Shown piece after piece: positions 1-6,035 of a stretch of 64,000 nucleotides of DNA. Position 1 is the stretch's first letter, and each line of letters starts with the position of its first letter. Under the pieces are notes generated by a model. The model had not been told where the DNA came from. It searched no databases and saw only the letters and a program-made list of their open reading frames with translations. The DNA is from Hyaloraphidium curvatum SAG 235-1 (lineage: Eukaryota; Fungi; Monoblepharomycota). Position numbers and translations under genes: made by a program. The DNA lies in assembly GCA_025558095.1 (NCBI GenBank), contig JAIVFI010000003.1, positions 558,001 to 622,000 on the forward strand. The letters run 5' to 3'.

Positions 1-1457
1 GTCAAGCTCGGTATCCGGATGACGCACCTCGACCTGACCGCGCTGCGCGGCAAGCAGCAGGGGAGTCCTGCCGCGGTGGTCGCACGCGTTGAGAAGCTCC
101 TTGTCTTCCACGGCCAGAGTACGCAGCACAGAAACGGATCCCGTCAGCGCAGCGACATGGGCCAGCGTGTATCCCTCCTTGTCCGCCTTCATGAGGTCGG
201 GACGGCGCGTGAGGAGCAACTCCACCACCGGCAGGCGCTGCTGGTCAAGAGCCAGAAGCAGGGCAGTGGCGCTGAAGGAGTCGGTGGCGTCCAGCAGAGC
301 CGGCTGGACCGCAAGCAGGCACCCGCAAACTTCGACGTGTCCGCGGAGGGCCGCAACATGGAGCGCAGTCCGGCGCGTTTCATCGGTGTGCTCAGGCTTC
401 GCTCCCTTCTCGAGGAGGAAGTTGACGATGTGGAGGTGCCCGTTGCTGCACGCCTCGATGAGCGCCGTCCATCCACGACCGTCCGCCCAGTTCACGTGCT
501 CCGACTGCGGGTAGTGGTGGAGCAGCGACTTGACGCAGCTGCAAAGCCGCGTAAGTTGGTGCGCTGCACCATGGGCAATCGAACTCACTCCAGGTGACCG
601 TTGCGAGCCGCGAGCTGAAGAGCCGAAAACTTGGAGCGGTTGGTGGGGATGTACCTCGAGCCCGAGTCCAGGAGCAAGTCAACGACTAGCAAACGGCAGC
701 TTCAGTCTTTGTCCTAACCGAGGGTCGCTTTAAGGGCCCACCAGGGGTGCTCCCGAAGCATGATGCGTGCATGAGCGGAGTGAGTCCATCCTGGTCTTCC
801 ACGTCGACATTTGCTCCACGGTCGAGAAGCAGAGTAACGGCTGAAGCACAGGTCAGAAGATGCAATGGGGACGTCCGCGCGACTCACTCGAGAGCTTTCC
901 ACCGATGGCTGCCCAGATGAGGGCATTCTTCCCCTTCCCGTCTACGGTTTTCAGGTTGGCCTTGTTGTTGAGGAGCAGGCGGATCATGTCGTCGCGTCCT
1001 GGGAGAAACAGTGTCATTGGGTGTTGTTTCCATCCCTCTCCATCCGGCGCCCACCTTCTTGCGCGGCAAACATGAGTGCGGTGTGGTGGAGCTATAGATG
1101 GGTCCGTCAGTCCGACAGCTGGGAGTCCGACCGGGAAATCCGACCCACAGTGTCAATCTCGCAGTCGGCCGACATGCCCTTCTCAATGAGGTGGGCCAGC
1201 GCGTGCAGGTCGGCCCTCTGCGTGGCCGCGCACCATTGCTGCACTTCGGGCGATGCCTCCTCAAAGACGCCAATGGAAGCCGCATCGATCTTGTGGCGCT
1301 TGGCCGGCGGGTCGACTGCCGGGCGGGGTCCTGTCGGGGCCTGCACAACCGGCGACAGTGGGCTAGACGGCGCGCTGTCCTTGCCGCTGCCGGGAGCTCC
1401 GCCGAGCTTGGCGCCCTTGTGCATGCGCAGCGAGCCGAAGCCCAACGCGCTCTTCAT
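1..1457 (-). CDS. Ankyrin-repeat protein, multi-exon, continues off the left edge of the window
   Basis: Minus-strand exons give repeated ankyrin motifs: GKNALIWAA, GLTPLMHA, GWTALIEACSNGHLHIVNFLL, RRTALHVAALRGHVEV, GRTPLLLAAQRG. Likely start MKSALG at 1457. Confidence 0.85.
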
Positions 1458-1717
1458 CGCGAGGACTGTTTGGGGGCTCTGTTTACGTTGGTGGGGAGCG
1501 GCGGCGTCAGGAGCTGCCGCGCGAGCGCGCGGGCAAGAACGCCCGGGACGCCACGTGCCTACACACGATGTCTTCGATCGTCGTGGGTTTGAGTGGCACA
1601 GGTCTCGCGATGGGGCGCAGGAGCAATGGGATTCGAGGTGCGAGTGCTGGGTGGCTGACGTGCGCCAAACGGGGTCCATGCGGTCCAGGACCTAGGCGAG
1701 ATTCCGCGGCAGTCGCA

Positions 1718-3280
1718 ATGCTGTCGCTCCTCAGAAACCCAGGATCCCTCTTCGGCATTGCTTGTGCCCTGTTTCTTCTCTTGGGATCCTCGGTCGTCTC
1801 CGCATCCTCGCGCCGTGTACCGCGAAATGGGAACCTCCGCTCCTACGGCAAAGACGGGGCGGTTCCGGCCTTCGCATCGCCGCGTCGGGTACCGCGAAAC
1901 GGCCAGGAAAGCAACCTCCGTTCACACGGCATCGATGAACCAGTGTCGATGTTCCGTCGGCAGAACGGAACGGCGATTCAATGCCAGCTCGAGCTGTTCA
2001 CGCAACTAATCGGCACCTTCTCCCTCGCCGATGGGACTGCAGTGTGGACGGGCTGGATCTCCATGCTCTGCAACGCCAACGTGACCGTGTGGGATTCGGT
2101 CGAGCTCCTGAACCTCGAAACGGAGTTCGGACCTCTCGTCACCAACAGACAAGCTGGCATAGTAGATCCGCCGGCCGCCCTGGGGCCGGGGTTCACCTTC
2201 TTCAGCACGGCAAAGATCCGTGTGCCGATTCTAGTCGACTCCGACTTGACGTATTACCCGTACGATCGCGTTTGGGTCCCGATCACGATGGAGGCGCTGG
2301 AGGAAACATCGGCGCTGCGCGTGTCGTTCCCCCAAGAGAACGCCATCATTGCCGATACTGACTTTGCGACCGACGACGAGTTCACTCTGTACTCAACGCG
2401 GGCCATCGTCGTCACGGAGACCATCGATTACCAGTTCCGGTATCTGGGAGGCCGCAATGCAACCTACGACCGCATCACCGTCGTCTACTCATTCTATCGG
2501 TCAGACTACGTCAATTGGATACAAGCAATGCTTCCTACGTTCCTGTCTTTCGTGCTGAGCATGGGTGCGCTCTTCCTGAGCGTCGTCGTCGATTTCGAAG
2601 CTCGGATGGGTATTTTGGGCGCAAGCGTCTTCGTCGTCGTGCTCAACATCAACGTGCTGAACGCTTTCTTGGGCTTCCCGAGTGTCATGACCACCGGTGA
2701 CCTGATCAATCTTGTGACAATGTCAATCATCGGGCTGGTCATCGTGGAAACCATCTGGGAAAGGTGGCTTCAGTTGCGCTTCGAAGAGCTGAAGGAGGCC
2801 GAAGAGAAACGCCTCGAGGAACTGGAAGAGGTCGAGAACCGGAAGCTGGACGCGCAAGAACTGGCAATGGCAATCTCGAAGACCATTGCCGAGCTGGACG
2901 ATGACGGAGATCAAGGCGGGCTGCGAAGGAGATCCGCGGACCCTGCGCAGAAAAGCGATGGAGTGGCCGCCGCAGGAGTGATGCTTGAGGTCCCCAAAAC
3001 CGAGGCGCCGCTGTCTGCACCGAGGCAAACGACAGGAACGCCTCTGGTTTCGCCTACGAATCGGACTGCCACGGCCACCCCTGCACGAAAGACGTCCAAG
3101 GGGTGCTGCAACCTCATCCCGAACATGGAGAACGTGCCACTCGATAAGTACGAACAGGCCCTGCTTCACCTCAGTCTGGCCACGTTCGTCTTTTTCATGG
3201 TGGCATATATTGCGATCAACATAGGGCTTTTGGTGGGATACCGACCTTCGCCCTGCTACGAGGACGAGATTTGTCGTTGA
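1718..3280 (+). CDS. Cys-less pentameric ligand-gated ion channel subunit (Pro-loop/GLIC-ELIC-like), intronless
   Basis: Signal peptide. Pro-loop motif DLTYYPYD. Pre-M1 YDRITVVYSFYR. M1 with conserved Pro (AMLPTFLSFVLS), M2 (FEARMGILGASVFVVVLN), M2-M3 loop (FPSVMTTGD), M3, long cytoplasmic loop, C-terminal M4. Confidence 0.8.
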   Translation: MLSLLRNPGSLFGIACALFLLLGSSVVSASSRRVPRNGNLRSYGKDGAVPAFASPRRVPRNGQESNLRSHGIDEPVSMFRRQNGTAIQCQLELFTQLIGTFSLADGTAVWTGWISMLCNANVTVWDSVELLNLETEFGPLVTNRQAGIVDPPAALGPGFTFFSTAKIRVPILVDSDLTYYPYDRVWVPITMEALEETSALRVSFPQENAIIADTDFATDDEFTLYSTRAIVVTETIDYQFRYLGGRNATYDRITVVYSFYRSDYVNWIQAMLPTFLSFVLSMGALFLSVVVDFEARMGILGASVFVVVLNINVLNAFLGFPSVMTTGDLINLVTMSIIGLVIVETIWERWLQLRFEELKEAEEKRLEELEEVENRKLDAQELAMAISKTIAELDDDGDQGGLRRRSADPAQKSDGVAAAGVMLEVPKTEAPLSAPRQTTGTPLVSPTNRTATATPARKTSKGCCNLIPNMENVPLDKYEQALLHLSLATFVFFMVAYIAINIGLLVGYRPSPCYEDEICR

Positions 3281-3315
3281 AACCAGTGGCATCTGGGTTT
3301 AATTCACGCATGCAA

Positions 3316-5968
3316 CTAAGTCTTGAGCCCAGCCAGAGCCTCTGAGAGCCTGTCGTACATTGCGGTGCCCTCCCAATTGTTCTTGGCCCTGCCCAGCGTA
3401 GTCCGCAGCACCATGCGCGCCTGGTACGCCCAATCCTTCACCGCTGGTTCTTCTTTCCCGTCTGCGGTCACTGTCCGAGGGCCCAACGTGCGCAAGGCAT
3501 TCGCATAATCGAGCACGGCGTTTGCCAGCTCGGAGAAGCCTTCCTCCGAGCTCTCGGCGGCAGCTCCGGCGGCCAGCGTCCGATACGCCTTTTGGTAGCA
3601 CTCGATGGCCTGGCGAGGTGCATCTTGCGCTGCCCGAAACTTGCCAAACGCCGTCCAGACCGCAGCCACGCCGGCGACCTTGTCCGTGATCGACTCGAAC
3701 GCTTCCGCCATCCTCTTTGCGAGGAAAGCCGAGTCATCCGTCTTCCCATCCAGCTGCTGGATGACCTTGTCCGTCAAGATCCCGAGGACTTCCTTGTCGA
3801 CGCTTTCGCCCCCGTCCTTCTGCCATCGGAGCTCAACGATCCGTTCCAAAGCCTTCACGGCCTCCTTGAGCTGGTTCAGATCGGTGGCGACGTATAAATA
3901 GTTCTGCCAGATCTTCCAGTTCTCGTAGTCCTGCTTCAGCGCCTGCTGCAGAGCGACGTAGGCATCCTGTGCCTTCCTCTGGCGGATGTGGACAGCGGCA
4001 AGGTTCGTCCACGCTTCCGCATTCTCGTGGTTCAGCGACACGACACGCGTGAAGGCCATAGAGGCGGTGTCAAAGTCCTCCACTTGCAGTGCCGCGCAAC
4101 CCAGGATGAACCAGGAGTTCTCAAAGAGCGGGTTGATGGCCAGCGCTTTGCTGTAGCAATCCATGCTCTGCCGCCACTCGTTCCGTTTGAACCAGTAGCG
4201 GCCCAGGGACCGCATGGCCCGGGAAAAGCGCCGGTTCGCGGCCTCCGAGATCTCCCAGGCATGTTCCCAGTGCCTCGGGTCTCCCGTGACGTCGCCCAGA
4301 AGGCACCACAGCTTCGGGCTGTTTGGCGAGACCTCGAGCCGCTTCCGTATCAGCTCCTCGGCCTTCTTCGCCTTCTCCAGCATTTGGTAGCACTCGATTG
4401 CATCTTCCCACAGATGCAGGCGCTCGAAGATTTCCAGCGCCGAAACCGCCATGCCCAGGCCCATCCACCTTTCCCCAACTTCCCTCTCGAGCTGCCAGAT
4501 CGGGGGCATGTCAACGGACCAGATCAATGCCAGGCGCTCCGCAGCGGTAGCCGGGGCGGCGGTGGTTCCTGACGAAGCAAGGGTATAGTACTGGTCGACG
4601 AGCGCTTGGAGCTGCAGTATGGAACGCTCGACCGTGCGCGACTTTGTGGATTCGAGCCGCGATCGCAAGATCAACGCCATGGTGTAGATCGAAAAGTTCC
4701 TGTTGGGATCGTCCAGGATCCGACTGACGTAGGCCAGCATTTCCTCCTGCGTCAAACCATGCGCCGGGTTTGTGTTGCGCACGTTCAAGCTGGGCCCAAG
4801 AATCAGGTTTCGACCGCCTCCCTTGAAGGTGCGGAAACTCACCAGTGAGCAAGCAAGATTCCTTGATCGACAGTTCGCAGCGGCTTGGTCTTGGAGCCGT
4901 CGGCGAACTTGATGGACTCGAGCAACAAGTCGTCGTTCAACATAAGGCTGCTTGGGGCCCCATTGCCGTTGGCTGCGCCGGTTACCGCGTCGGAAGCCAC
5001 ACGACTCTCCGCTACGACGATCAGCTGCGCCTTGTCTTGTTGCTGAAATCGTGTCCGCTTTCCCAGGGCTCCGCTCAACAGCCAATGGAGCCCGGACGCC
5101 TGCTGAGCTTTCTCGAGCATGGCCTGCGCAGAAGCTGACATAAGCAGAGCCCTAACGGAAGTCGCCAAGTCATCGCACCTTGGCGCGCTGGTCCTGCTTG
5201 TGGTAATGGTAAACCAGGCCGTACTCGAGAAAGAAGAAAGCGCGGAGATCCGATTCGTCTGAAAGGCCTTCCAAAGCCGCTTCCATTTCCTCCATCGACT
5301 CCAGCGTCTCCTCAAACAGAGTAGCAGCAGGGTTGTCCAGGATTCGTTGCTGGACGAACAGGGCCCGAGCCCTCCACCACGCCAAGGAGCGCGGGGCGCC
5401 TAGCGACTGGTCCGCAAACGCTTTCTTCAGTCCCGAAAAGATGCCAAGAGCCAGAACGAGAAGCGTGAGGCCCCTTGTGAGGCCGTAAGCTTCTTCATTG
5501 TCGGCGGAAAGAGCTTCCAAGAGCAGCTTCGCGGGCAAGCCGGACGCCAACTCGGTCCCGTAAGCGACGCTCCCAAAGATCACATCATCGCTCCATTGAG
5601 TCGGGGAAGGCCCGGTCCAGTTGTGCTGCACAAACAGCTTCAACGCGGCGATCCCGACGCAAAGGAACGACAACGCTTTGTCCGGCGACGCAGCGGAGCC
5701 GGCTAGGGCTTCCGATACGGTGCTTGCCAGCAATGCTACGGGATCTAGGGTACTGTGTTATGATAGATTAAAGCAAGGAACGGAACCGCCCACCTCTGGA
5801 CTCGGCGGACGAGATCCGGGGCAAGAGGTTGCCGAAGAGACTTTCGGCGTCGCTCCCACGCAAAACCTCCGAGTACTGGCCTTTCAGGACATCTCTGACA
5901 GGCAAAGGAATGCTCTCTAAATTCTCTTCTGGCTTCGGTACGGCCCCGAGGAGGAGTAGAGCTTCCAT
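3316..5968 (-). CDS. EMW1: TPR protein, TTC27/Emw1 homolog, multi-exon
   Basis: SGALGKRTRFQQ, RSRLESTKSRTVERSILQLQALV, SALEIFERLHLWE and TPR repeats. Confidence 0.9.
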
Positions 5969-6035
5969 GTCGGTTGTTGTCGATTGTTGTCGATCCTCTC
6001 CGATCGGACGGTTGACCCAGTTCGCCGCCCGCGGA

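What the first reader, a model, noticed from the sequence alone, without database searches (positions are those of the whole stretch)
1718..3280. Cys-less pentameric ligand-gated ion channel in an apparently fungal genome
Seen: signal peptide, a beta-rich ectodomain with the Pro-loop motif (V-D-S-DLTYYPYD-R-V-W-V, Val at both canonical Cys positions), pre-M1 Arg, four TM helices, and a long acidic/coiled-coil M3-M4 loop. Known: pLGICs occur in animals, some protists and prokaryotes (GLIC, ELIC) and are generally regarded as absent from fungi. The M2 start FEAR resembles GLIC YEAN (Glu at -2'). Inferred: a cation-leaning chemosensory channel. It is intronless among intron-rich neighbours, which fits horizontal acquisition or retention in an early-diverging lineage.
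Basis: partly seen in the sequence, partly recalled or inferred. Interest (0 to 1): 0.88.

Follow-up and report, generated by a model that had tools for sequence, protein, structure and literature searches.

The report
Divergent pentameric channel gene in chytrid

Summary
Window 1718-3280 (+) is an intronless 520-aa ORF with a signal peptide, a basic linker, a beta-sandwich ectodomain, a Pro-loop (VDSDLTYYPYDRVWV, Val at both Cys positions), a pre-M1 Arg, M1-M4, and a long M3-M4 insert.

Pfam and PDB sequence searches with the protein alone find nothing. An exhaustive profile search then links it to bacterial pLGICs:
- Family profile against bacterial-subfamily profile: HHalign E 2e-37.
- That bacterial profile against GLIC/ELIC: E 4e-29.
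- AlphaFold model (pLDDT 87) against GlyR, GABA-A, ELIC and GLIC: Z about 22, rmsd about 2.5 A over about 285 residues.

The genome is the fungus Hyaloraphidium curvatum. The gene is not a contaminant:
- It has four paralogous loci, and the two full-length ones have host-type introns.
- An ortholog in a second eukaryote shows synteny on both sides.
- One spliced RNA contig links it to both neighbours.

The same genome holds at least 8 canonical Cys-less pLGIC loci that NCBI already labels as such, though I found no paper on fungal pLGICs. The new part is a second, divergent, unannotated family.

The origin (bacterial transfer or ancient paralogy) is unresolved (AU p = 0.20). Cation selectivity (Glu at -2') is an inference, and the ligand is unknown.

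The parts
1718..1810 (+). Start codon and predicted signal peptide (about residues 1-31: an n-region with Arg, a 17-residue hydrophobic core, then small residues S-A-S)
   Evidence: Sequence read. It aligns with the hydrophobic N-terminus of ortholog P0002 and of P0006/P0008. No signal-peptide predictor was available, so the cleavage site is inferred.
1811..1969 (+). Basic linker with two copies of an RRVPRNG..NLRS.G motif between the signal peptide and the ectodomain. It is poorly conserved in the ortholog.
   Evidence: Translation and alignment. This is the subject of a separate first-stage note (s1-709522).
1970..2506 (+). Extracellular beta-sandwich domain (residues 85-263), with family-conserved Cys89 and Cys118
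   Evidence: AlphaFold strands E10-184 of P0001 with pLDDT >95. The region aligns to the ligand-binding domain of pLGICs.
2234..2278 (+). Pro-loop VDSDLTYYPYDRVWV. Pro181 and Asp183 are nearly invariant across 126 homologs, and Val sits at both canonical Cys positions.
   Evidence: P104 and D106 of P0001 are at least 90% conserved.
2498..2500 (+). Pre-M1 arginine (Arg261), nearly invariant across the alignment
   Evidence: (R184 of P0001 at least 90% conserved).
2507..2569 (+). M1 helix (residues 264-284), containing the conserved M1 proline (MLPTF)
   Evidence: (H187-207 of P0001).
2594..2671 (+). M2 pore helix (residues 293-318): Glu294 (-2'), Ala295 (-1'), Arg296 (0'), Gly 2', Ala 6', Phe305 (9'), Leu 13', Asn 14', Asn 16'
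   Evidence: (H216-241). The register comes from the profile alignments to GlyR, ELIC and GLIC M2 combined.
2693..2902 (+). M3 helix, continuous with a long acidic, coiled-coil-like cytoplasmic helix (residues 326-395)
   Evidence: a single helix H249-318 of P0001, pLDDT >95 to about residue 310.
2903..3145 (+). Disordered Pro/Thr/Ser-rich cytoplasmic loop ending in a conserved Cys-Cys pair before M4
   Evidence: (pLDDT 42-58) and alignment (CC invariant).
3146..3238 (+). M4 helix (residues 477-507)
   Evidence: (H400-430). It is included in the structural alignments, which reach model residue 432-436.
3239..3280 (+). Short extracellular C-tail GYRPSPCYEDEICR with two family-conserved Cys, then the TGA stop. 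Only 35 nt separate it from the stop codon of the convergent TPR gene (3316-3318).

Best explanation
Window 1718-3280 encodes a subunit of a pentameric ligand-gated ion channel of the Cys-less ('Pro-loop') type in the fungus Hyaloraphidium curvatum. It belongs to a small lineage-restricted family: four loci here, at least four in a second related eukaryote, and a few in metagenomes. The core of the family (ectodomain through M3) is most similar to a bacterial pLGIC subfamily found in Cyanobacteria, Syntrophobacteraceae, Streptomyces, Bacteroidota and others. Onto that core the eukaryotic family has added a signal peptide, a long helical-plus-disordered M3-M4 cytoplasmic insert, and a Cys-containing C-tail. 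Inferred mechanism: five subunits assemble around a pore lined by M2. An unknown extracellular ligand or condition acts on the beta-sandwich domain. The signal passes to the pore through the conserved interface residues (Pro181/Asp183 of the Pro-loop, pre-M1 Arg261, M1 Pro, M2-M3 loop). The hydrophobic girdle at Phe 9'/Leu 13' acts as the gate. The ring of Glu294 at -2' (Asp in the closest relatives) favours cations, as in GLIC. What is shown here: homology, fold, signature residues, genomic integration and presence in RNA. What is inferred: pentamer formation, gating, ion selectivity (about 60% cationic) and plasma-membrane location. The ligand is unknown.
For: Homology. A profile of the window protein and its ortholog found 127 proteins with E<1e-3, 17 of them below 1e-10, among 1.84 billion, and 47 of 126 hit Pfam Neur_chan_LBD. 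The chytrid-family-only profile against the prokaryote-type-only profile gives HHalign probability 99.94%, E 2.1e-37, over 255 columns from beta1 to the end of M3. The prokaryote-type profile alone hits GLIC/ELIC at E 4e-29. The family-only profile against the PDB puts 17 pLGIC chains on top, aligned in register, though at E 0.02-1. Fold. The AlphaFold2 model has pLDDT 87.1 and pTM 0.77. Foldseek finds at least 500 PDB matches with E<=0.001, the listed top ranks all pLGIC chains. VIA-align gives Z 22.7, rmsd 2.4 A over 284 residues to GlyR alpha2, Z 22.2 to ELIC and Z 22.1 to GLIC, covering residues 4-436. The structural neighbours in the ESM Atlas are prokaryotic pLGIC clusters (four bacterial, one archaeal) with TM 0.71-0.83, and the embedding neighbours are pLGIC clusters at 0.94. 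Signature residues. Pro and Asp of the Pro-loop and the pre-M1 Arg are at least 90% conserved over 126 sequences. Real fungal gene. Paralogs are named Hyaloraphidium curvatum by NCBI. There are four loci in the genome, one with a GT..AG intron in M2. The ortholog sits between the same ankyrin and TPR genes in another eukaryote. A 9.8-kb RNA contig, 100% identical, carries spliced neighbour introns and an unspliced channel ORF.
Against: The protein itself matches no Pfam pLGIC model and no PDB sequence. The family-only profile reaches PDB pLGICs only at marginal E-values. The AlphaFold model was built on an alignment that contains genuine bacterial pLGICs, so the fold match is not fully independent of the sequence link; with only two sequences the model failed (pLDDT 37). 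The RNA contig is unstranded and merges three genes, so sense transcription of the channel is not proven. No pentamer model, electrophysiology or ligand information exists. The 9' Phe and the E-A-R motif (Ala -1' and Arg 0' are anion-channel-like) leave selectivity uncertain, and the P0006/P0009 subclade has Gly at -2'.
Confidence: 0.85

Rival explanations
1. Origin A. The family came from a bacterial pLGIC by horizontal transfer into an ancestor of the Hyaloraphidium lineage. It then gained a signal peptide, a cytoplasmic insert and introns, and it duplicated.
For: The nearest detectable relatives are 310-390-aa prokaryote-type proteins in bacterial contexts: a molybdopterin/NrfD operon, a cyanobacterial CP12/DUF3177 neighbourhood, an Azospirillaceae MAG, and 80 named bacterial genomes. 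HHalign to this bacterial subfamily gives E 2e-37, against E 7e-4 to the canonical pLGICs of the same genome. A shared M2 motif (R-x-G-x-L-x-G-x-x-F-x-x-V-x-N, with Phe at 9') is seen in both groups. Among the clusters whose names were looked up, no named fungus other than H. curvatum appears.
Against: The family sits on a very long stem (1.8-2.4 substitutions per site), and its attachment point within the bacterial sequences is unresolved. No donor clade can be named. The weak A4-A8 score partly reflects the low diversity of both profiles. The AU test does not reject one clade for both fungal families (p 0.20). Other eukaryotic Cys-less pLGICs (Monosiga, Capsaspora, algae) could not be added to the tree.
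Confidence: 0.45
2. Origin B. The family is an ancient eukaryotic Cys-less pLGIC lineage, possibly an old paralog of the canonical H. curvatum family. It was retained in this early-branching fungal lineage, lost elsewhere in Fungi, and diverged rapidly.
For: Jaiteh et al. describe patchy eukaryotic Cys-less pLGICs that group near prokaryotic ones, with frequent loss (PMC4795631). The same genome retains at least 8 canonical Cys-less pLGICs. The family has eukaryote-type features (long M3-M4 insert, introns in paralogs, several paralogs, conserved synteny). The AU test allows a single clade of both fungal families. The embedding neighbours are eukaryotic pLGIC clusters.
Against: Profile similarity is much stronger to the bacterial subfamily than to the canonical fungal family. 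No eukaryotic relative outside the Hyaloraphidium-like organisms was recovered in the exhaustive search as far as origins could be checked. The structural nearest neighbours are prokaryotic clusters.
Confidence: 0.45
3. It has the pLGIC fold but is not a functioning ligand-gated channel. It could be a non-conducting receptor or scaffold, or a decaying gene.
For: No functional data exist. The 9' Phe is unusual, no ligand-site residues could be assigned, and one locus (C11) looks partial.
Against: The full ORF is conserved at 46% identity with an ortholog. M1-M3, the interface residues and the C-tail are nearly invariant. The pore-lining pattern and the coupling residues are intact. The ORF is present in RNA.
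Confidence: 0.08
4. It is bacterial contamination or an assembly artefact in the fungal assembly.
For: The closest non-family relatives are bacterial, and the gene has no intron.
Against: The G+C content matches the neighbourhood. One RNA contig joins the gene to two intron-bearing neighbours. The same gene order is found in a second eukaryote. Paralogs carry spliceosomal introns. The contig is 1.15 Mb long.
Confidence: 0.01

Closest known systems
Prokaryotic pLGICs GLIC (Gloeobacter) and ELIC (Dickeya/Erwinia), and the uncharacterised bacterial subfamily carrying the WD[VL]x[NQD][FY]PFD motif
   Same: Cys-less Pro-loop, beta-sandwich plus M1-M4 fold (Z 22.1-22.2, rmsd 2.6-2.7 A), conserved Pro/Asp/pre-M1 Arg, an acidic residue at -2' as in GLIC (alignment), and a shared M2 motif with Phe at 9' in the bacterial subfamily.
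   Different: The fungal protein has a signal peptide and basic linker, an insert of about 125 residues between M3 and M4 (an M3-continuous helix plus a disordered loop) where bacterial proteins have a short turn, a Cys-containing C-tail, and two conserved ectodomain Cys. Sequence identity is only about 17-20%.
Eukaryotic Cys-less 'Pro-loop receptors' of protists (Monosiga, Capsaspora, chlorophytes, diatoms) described by Jaiteh, Taly and Henin 2016 (PMC4795631)
   Same: A eukaryotic host, no Cys-loop cysteines, patchy distribution, and a long cytoplasmic loop.
   Different: That inventory found none in Fungi. The sequence relationship to this family could not be tested here, because no reference sequences were available through the tools.
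Canonical Cys-less pLGICs of H. curvatum itself (NCBI: 'neurotransmitter-gated ion-channel ligand-binding domain-containing protein'; P0151-P0159)
   Same: Same genome, same superfamily, Cys-less, and a long C-terminal/cytoplasmic region.
   Different: They pass the Pfam PF02931/PF02932 thresholds and have WTPD, FPFDxQ and an M2 'PERLGLTITLVLT' with Glu at -1' and Leu at 9'. The window family passes no Pfam threshold, has Glu at -2' and Phe at 9', and matches them only at HHalign E 7e-4.
Animal Cys-loop receptors (GlyR, GABA-A, nAChR, 5-HT3)
   Same: Overall fold (top structural matches, Z 22.7) and a long M3-M4 intracellular domain.
   Different: There is no Cys-loop disulfide. The intracellular helix is continuous with M3 rather than an MA helix continuous with M4. 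Sequence identity is 11-16%.

Membership tests
[quoted passage not shown] | Sequence match to the curated family models (Pfam PF02931 Neur_chan_LBD, PF02932 Neur_chan_memb) above the gathering score | tested here: not met
   No hit at E<=10 for the window protein or for P0001. This reflects divergence: many bacterial members of the sister subfamily also fail, or score below the cut-off.
[quoted passage not shown] | Statistically significant homology to bona fide members | tested here: met
   HHalign 99.94%, E 2.1e-37 to a bacterial subfamily profile, which itself matches GLIC/ELIC at E 4e-29. HMMER E values down to 2e-11 to individual bacterial members in a 1.84-billion-protein search.
[quoted passage not shown] | Subunit fold: N-terminal extracellular beta-sandwich followed by four transmembrane helices, with the C-terminus outside | tested here: met
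   Model with pLDDT 87. Z 22.7, rmsd 2.4 A over 284 residues covering the ectodomain and M1-M4. Foldseek probability 1.00. Caveat: the alignment used for the model contains bacterial pLGICs.
[quoted passage not shown] | Pro-loop [FY]-P-x-D, pre-M1 Arg and M1 Pro at the ectodomain-membrane interface | tested here: met
   YPYD at residues 180-183, Arg261, and MLPTF in M1. The Pro, Asp and Arg are at least 90% conserved in 126 homologs.
[quoted passage not shown] | Homo- or hetero-pentameric assembly with an M2-lined pore | not testable with these tools
The M2 pattern (small residues at 2'/6', hydrophobic at 9'/13') is compatible with a pore.
[quoted passage not shown] | Ion conduction gated by an extracellular ligand or protons | not testable with these tools
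   This needs electrophysiology.
Cys-loop receptors sensu stricto (animal type) | Disulfide-bonded pair of Cys 13 residues apart flanking the F-P-x-D motif | tested here: not met
   Val173 and Val187 occupy the two positions, so the protein is Cys-less.
Cation-selective pLGICs | A ring of acidic residues at -1' or -2' at the cytoplasmic end of M2, and no Pro(-2')-Ala(-1')-Arg(0') anion motif | tested here: inconclusive
   Glu294 is at -2' (Asp in P0002-P0005 and P0008), but it is followed by Ala(-1')-Arg(0'). The P0006/P0009 clade has Gly at -2'. The register is inferred from the alignments.

The most novel reading that the evidence does not exclude
A bacterial pLGIC was captured by an ancestor of the Hyaloraphidium lineage and turned into a eukaryotic channel: it gained a signal peptide, an M3-continuous cytoplasmic helix, introns, and four or more paralogs. 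This fungus would then carry two independently acquired pLGIC lineages, in a kingdom that the literature lists as lacking the superfamily.
Probability: 0.4. Interest if true: 0.7.

Novelty: new variant of a known kind. Interest (0 to 1): 0.6.

Why it matters
The standard inventory of pLGICs states that Fungi have none (PMC4795631). In about 8.4 million full texts I found no paper that links pLGICs with chytrids, Monoblepharidomycetes or Hyaloraphidium.

This fungus has two pLGIC families:
- a canonical one that is already auto-annotated in GenBank but apparently undiscussed in the literature;
- the divergent, unannotated one in this window, which standard domain searches miss.

That changes the known phyletic distribution of the superfamily. 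It gives a compact, intronless, eukaryotic but bacterial-like subunit that could be a convenient structural and functional model. It also offers a test case for how a prokaryote-type channel core acquires a eukaryotic intracellular domain. Finally, it fits a picture in which this lineage retains or acquires sensory ion channels that are absent from other fungi.

Tried and rejected
Steps that led nowhere:
- A direct Pfam scan and a phmmer search of the PDB with the single protein gave nothing relevant.
- AlphaFold with a two-sequence alignment failed (pLDDT 37).
- Word-index homolog searches with the protein and with the 9-sequence family alignment returned only the protein itself plus one relative each.
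A 6-sequence alignment worked.
- I tried to name the second organism (SRR26194948) and the third (SRR23967301) by a paper search and by an Rfam scan of their contigs. Neither gave a hit.
- A search of earlier scan findings for pLGIC words returned nothing.

Ideas considered and rejected:
- Bacterial contamination is rejected.
- The upstream ATG at 1568 is unlikely to be the start. It abuts the intron/5' exon of the divergent ankyrin gene, and it would bury the hydrophobic segment 50 residues inside the protein, whereas the ortholog starts at the equivalent of 1718.
- Using the absence of introns as an argument for transfer does not hold, because the paralogs have introns.

Steps not done:
- I made no joined (spliced) gene models of the paralogs or neighbours and sent none to any search tool. 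Exons were examined piece by piece.
Full report
**1. Is the feature there?**

Yes. The + strand carries an open frame from 1568 to 3280.

- The N-terminus MLSLLRNPGSLFGIACALFLLLGSSVVSASS looks like a signal peptide.
- It aligns with an equivalent hydrophobic segment in the 46%-identical ortholog P0002 and in the more distant relatives P0006 and P0008.
- The public gene model (P0001, 443 aa) starts at residue 78 (window 1949) and lacks this segment, so it is probably truncated at the N-terminus.
- The Pro-loop at 2234-2278 reads VDSDLTYYPYDRVWV. Val lies eight residues before and six residues after the Pro, exactly where Cys-loop receptors have their two cysteines.
- The pre-M1 Arg, M1 with its Pro, and M2 starting DFEARMG are at 2498-2671.
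- M4 and the tail GYRPSPCYEDEICR are at 3146-3277.

**2. Is it a pLGIC?**

Direct tests fail. There is no Pfam hit at E<=10 and no PDB sequence hit of any relevance. The first positive sign was a language-model neighbour search, whose nearest clusters carry Neur_chan_LBD/Neur_chan_memb (score 0.94, 206 of 256 shared features).

I then ran an exhaustive HMMER search of 1.84 billion cluster representatives, using a profile of the window protein and its ortholog restricted to ectodomain through M3 (A2).
- It returned 127 proteins at E<1e-3 and 17 below 1e-10. Most are 310-350 aa, the size of prokaryotic pLGICs.
- Of 126 aligned hits, 47 match PF02931 individually.

To avoid circularity I separated the sets.
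- A4 holds the nine close relatives only. A5 holds 102 prokaryote-type hits only.
- A4 against A5 by HHalign gives probability 99.94%, E 2.1e-37, over 255 aligned columns from the first beta strand to the end of M3.
- A5 alone against the PDB gives GLIC and ELIC at E 4e-29 to 1e-26.
- A4 alone against the PDB puts 17 pLGIC chains on top, aligned in register from the Pro-loop through M3, but only at E 0.02-1.
- Across the 126-sequence alignment the only nearly invariant residues are the Pro and Asp of the Pro-loop, a Gly, and the pre-M1 Arg. These are the interface residues that Jaiteh et al. describe as the conserved core of the superfamily (PMC4795631).

**3. Fold**

- With a two-sequence alignment AlphaFold failed (pLDDT 37).
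- With the 126-sequence alignment it gave pLDDT 87.1 and pTM 0.77, with values above 95 for residues 10-310 and 400-430 of P0001.
- Foldseek against the PDB found at least 500 matches with E<=0.001. The listed top ranks are all pLGIC chains, at E about 1e-14 and probability 1.00.
- VIA-align gives Z 22.7, rmsd 2.4 A over 284 residues to GlyR alpha2, Z 22.2 to ELIC and Z 22.1 to GLIC. These alignments span model residues 4-436, so they include M4.
- Structural neighbours in the ESM Atlas are prokaryotic pLGIC clusters with TM 0.71-0.83 (by target) and rmsd 2.4-2.8 A: four bacterial (Cyanobacteriota, Bacteroidota twice, Planctomycetota) and one archaeal.
- Caveat: the alignment used for the model contains true pLGICs, so the fold result supports the sequence link but is not independent of it.
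- One unusual feature is that helix 3 continues without a break for about 45 residues beyond the membrane (H249-318 of P0001), through the acidic EELKEAEEKRLEELEEVENRKLDAQELAMAI segment. About 80 disordered residues follow, then M4.

**4. Whose gene is it?**

- Two close relatives are NCBI proteins of Hyaloraphidium curvatum: KAI9016126.1 and KAI9016919.1.
- The canonical pLGICs found in the same assembly are also labelled H. curvatum.
- Earlier follow-up notes of this scan reached the same identification.
- NCBI taxonomy places the species in Fungi, Monoblepharomycota.

Contamination is excluded on four grounds.
- One RNA-derived contig of 9757 nt is 100% identical to window 28-6000. It has nine short introns (CT..AC on the + strand, one CT..GC) spliced out of the two flanking minus-strand genes, and it runs unspliced from 1559 to 4789.
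- In a second eukaryote (Logan assembly of SRR26194948) the ortholog lies between the same genes. The downstream TPR protein is 67% identical. The upstream ankyrin-repeat gene is 60-65% identical, and further TPR-gene exons are 53-54% identical.
- The assembly has three more loci of the family, on C22, C23 and C11.
- The C22 copy has a 50-nt GT..AG intron inside M2, and the C23 copy is split into about five pieces.

The RNA contig is unstranded and merges three genes. It shows presence in RNA and the absence of splicing, but not the transcript's strand or its ends.

**5. Distribution and origin**

Family members were found in four kinds of source:
- H. curvatum;
- the SRR26194948 organism (P0002, P0004, P0006, P0010);
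- SRR23967301 (P0009);
- environmental metagenomes (P0003 and its cluster).

Among the 30 clusters whose sources were looked up, no fungus other than H. curvatum is named.

The next-nearest sequences are bacterial:
- a soil contig with a molybdopterin oxidoreductase/NrfD operon;
- a cyanobacterial CP12/DUF3177 neighbourhood;
- an Azospirillaceae MAG;
- 80 named bacterial genomes recovered with the subfamily motif WD[VL]x[NQD][FY]PFD, including Leptolyngbya, Pseudanabaena, Nostoc, Syntrophobacteraceae, Streptomyces and Chryseolinea.

In maximum-likelihood trees the fungal family is monophyletic (SH-aLRT 100). Its stem is 1.8-2.4 substitutions per site long, and its attachment among the bacterial sequences is unresolved.

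**6. A second pLGIC family in the same genome**

- Searching the assembly with Pfam PF02931 gave ten matches. Nine are above the curated cut-off, at eight or more loci, several of them in adjacent pairs.
- They are also Cys-less (…AAFPFDKQNL…), but otherwise textbook: WTPD, FPFDxQ, and M2 'PERLGLTITLVLT' with Glu at -1' and Leu at 9'.
- NCBI already names them 'neurotransmitter-gated ion-channel ligand-binding domain-containing protein [Hyaloraphidium curvatum]'.
- So the presence of pLGICs in this fungus is visible in public annotation, even though the literature I could search does not mention it, and the 2016 inventory and a 2024 survey that cites it still give the old distribution.

How the two families relate:
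- The window family matches the canonical family only weakly (HHalign E 7e-4, probability 27%).
- The canonical family matches the bacterial subfamily at E 9e-24.
- In a joint tree both fungal families are monophyletic and separate, but forcing them into one clade costs only 5.5 log-likelihood units (p-AU 0.20).
- I therefore leave bacterial transfer and ancient eukaryotic paralogy at roughly equal odds.

**7. How it probably works (inference)**

I placed the window sequence on the M2 numbering through the alignments. The positions are Glu294 (-2'), Ala (-1'), Arg296 (0'), Gly (2'), Ala (6'), Phe305 (9'), Leu (13'), Asn (14') and Asn (16').
- The hydrophobic 9'/13' girdle is the usual gate position. 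Phe at 9' is shared with the bacterial sister subfamily.
- An acidic -2' residue is conserved in the window's subclade: Asp in P0002-P0005 and P0008. It matches the position of the Glu in GLIC's 'YEAN'. That favours cation selectivity, but the following Ala-Arg resembles anion channels. I put cation selectivity at about 60%.
- The ligand cannot be inferred.
- Other features are likely but untested. The two ectodomain Cys (Cys89, Cys118) and the two C-tail Cys are probably disulfide partners. The conserved Cys-Cys before M4 is a candidate lipidation site.

**8. Verdict**

The claim needs tempering in three ways.
- The Pfam test fails for this protein.
- Canonical pLGICs in the same species are already annotated in public databases.
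- The argument for transfer is open.

What is new is a divergent, lineage-restricted pLGIC family with a bacterial-like core and eukaryotic additions, unannotated and below Pfam detection, in a kingdom for which no pLGIC is described in the literature.

Noticed in passing
G000:C6:45168-47763, C6:861959-863872, C1:280170-282228, C37:166327-168319, C39:459761-460393 (loci L103-L107): There are at least 8 canonical, Pfam-detectable Cys-less pLGIC genes in the same genome, mostly as adjacent pairs (one tandem pair, three divergent pairs). M2 reads PERLGLTITLVLT, with Glu at -1'. NCBI labels them neurotransmitter-gated ion-channel proteins, but I found no paper that discusses them.
   Followed up: partly
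window 1718-1948 versus public model P0001: The public gene model starts at Met78 (window 1949) and omits the signal peptide and basic linker that the ortholog supports.
   Followed up: partly
L002 2245-2294 (G000:C22, about 681323-681372): The C22 paralog has a 50-nt GT..AG intron inside M2. The public model P0008 (KAI9016919.1) reads into this intron and ends prematurely, so it is a truncated annotation.
   Followed up: yes
P0005 (KAI9016126.1), G000:C23:484627-486130: This 1114-aa public model joins a Peptidase_S58 domain (residues 399-656) to a channel-family C-terminus (residues about 750-1114). It is probably two neighbouring genes fused by the annotation, though a real fusion is not excluded.
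   Followed up: partly
G000:C11:572948-573561: The fourth locus matches only the N-terminal strands, part of M3 and the M4/C-tail of the family profile. The Pro-loop to M2 region is missing, so this may be a degenerate or highly divergent copy.
   Followed up: no
window 1478-1559: The first intron of the upstream minus-strand ankyrin gene has CT..GC on the + strand, which is a GC..AG intron rather than GT..AG. That gene's 5' exon lies within about 160 nt of the channel's start codon, so the two genes are head to head with almost no spacer.
   Followed up: no
window 3281-3315: Only 35 nt separate the stop codons of the channel and the convergent TPR (TTC27-like) gene, so their 3' UTRs must overlap. 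This explains why the RNA assembly merges three genes into one contig.
   Followed up: no
window 1811-1969: The region between the signal peptide and the ectodomain holds two copies of RRVPRNG(x)NLRS(Y/H)G, rich in basic pairs. It is not conserved in the ortholog. It is the subject of a separate first-stage note.
   Followed up: no
L019 (ENA ERZ28593542 metagenome contig): A third organism's family member (P0003) also lies near a TPR gene of the same Pfam make-up, but in a different arrangement (same strand, with a DUF952 gene between).
   Followed up: no
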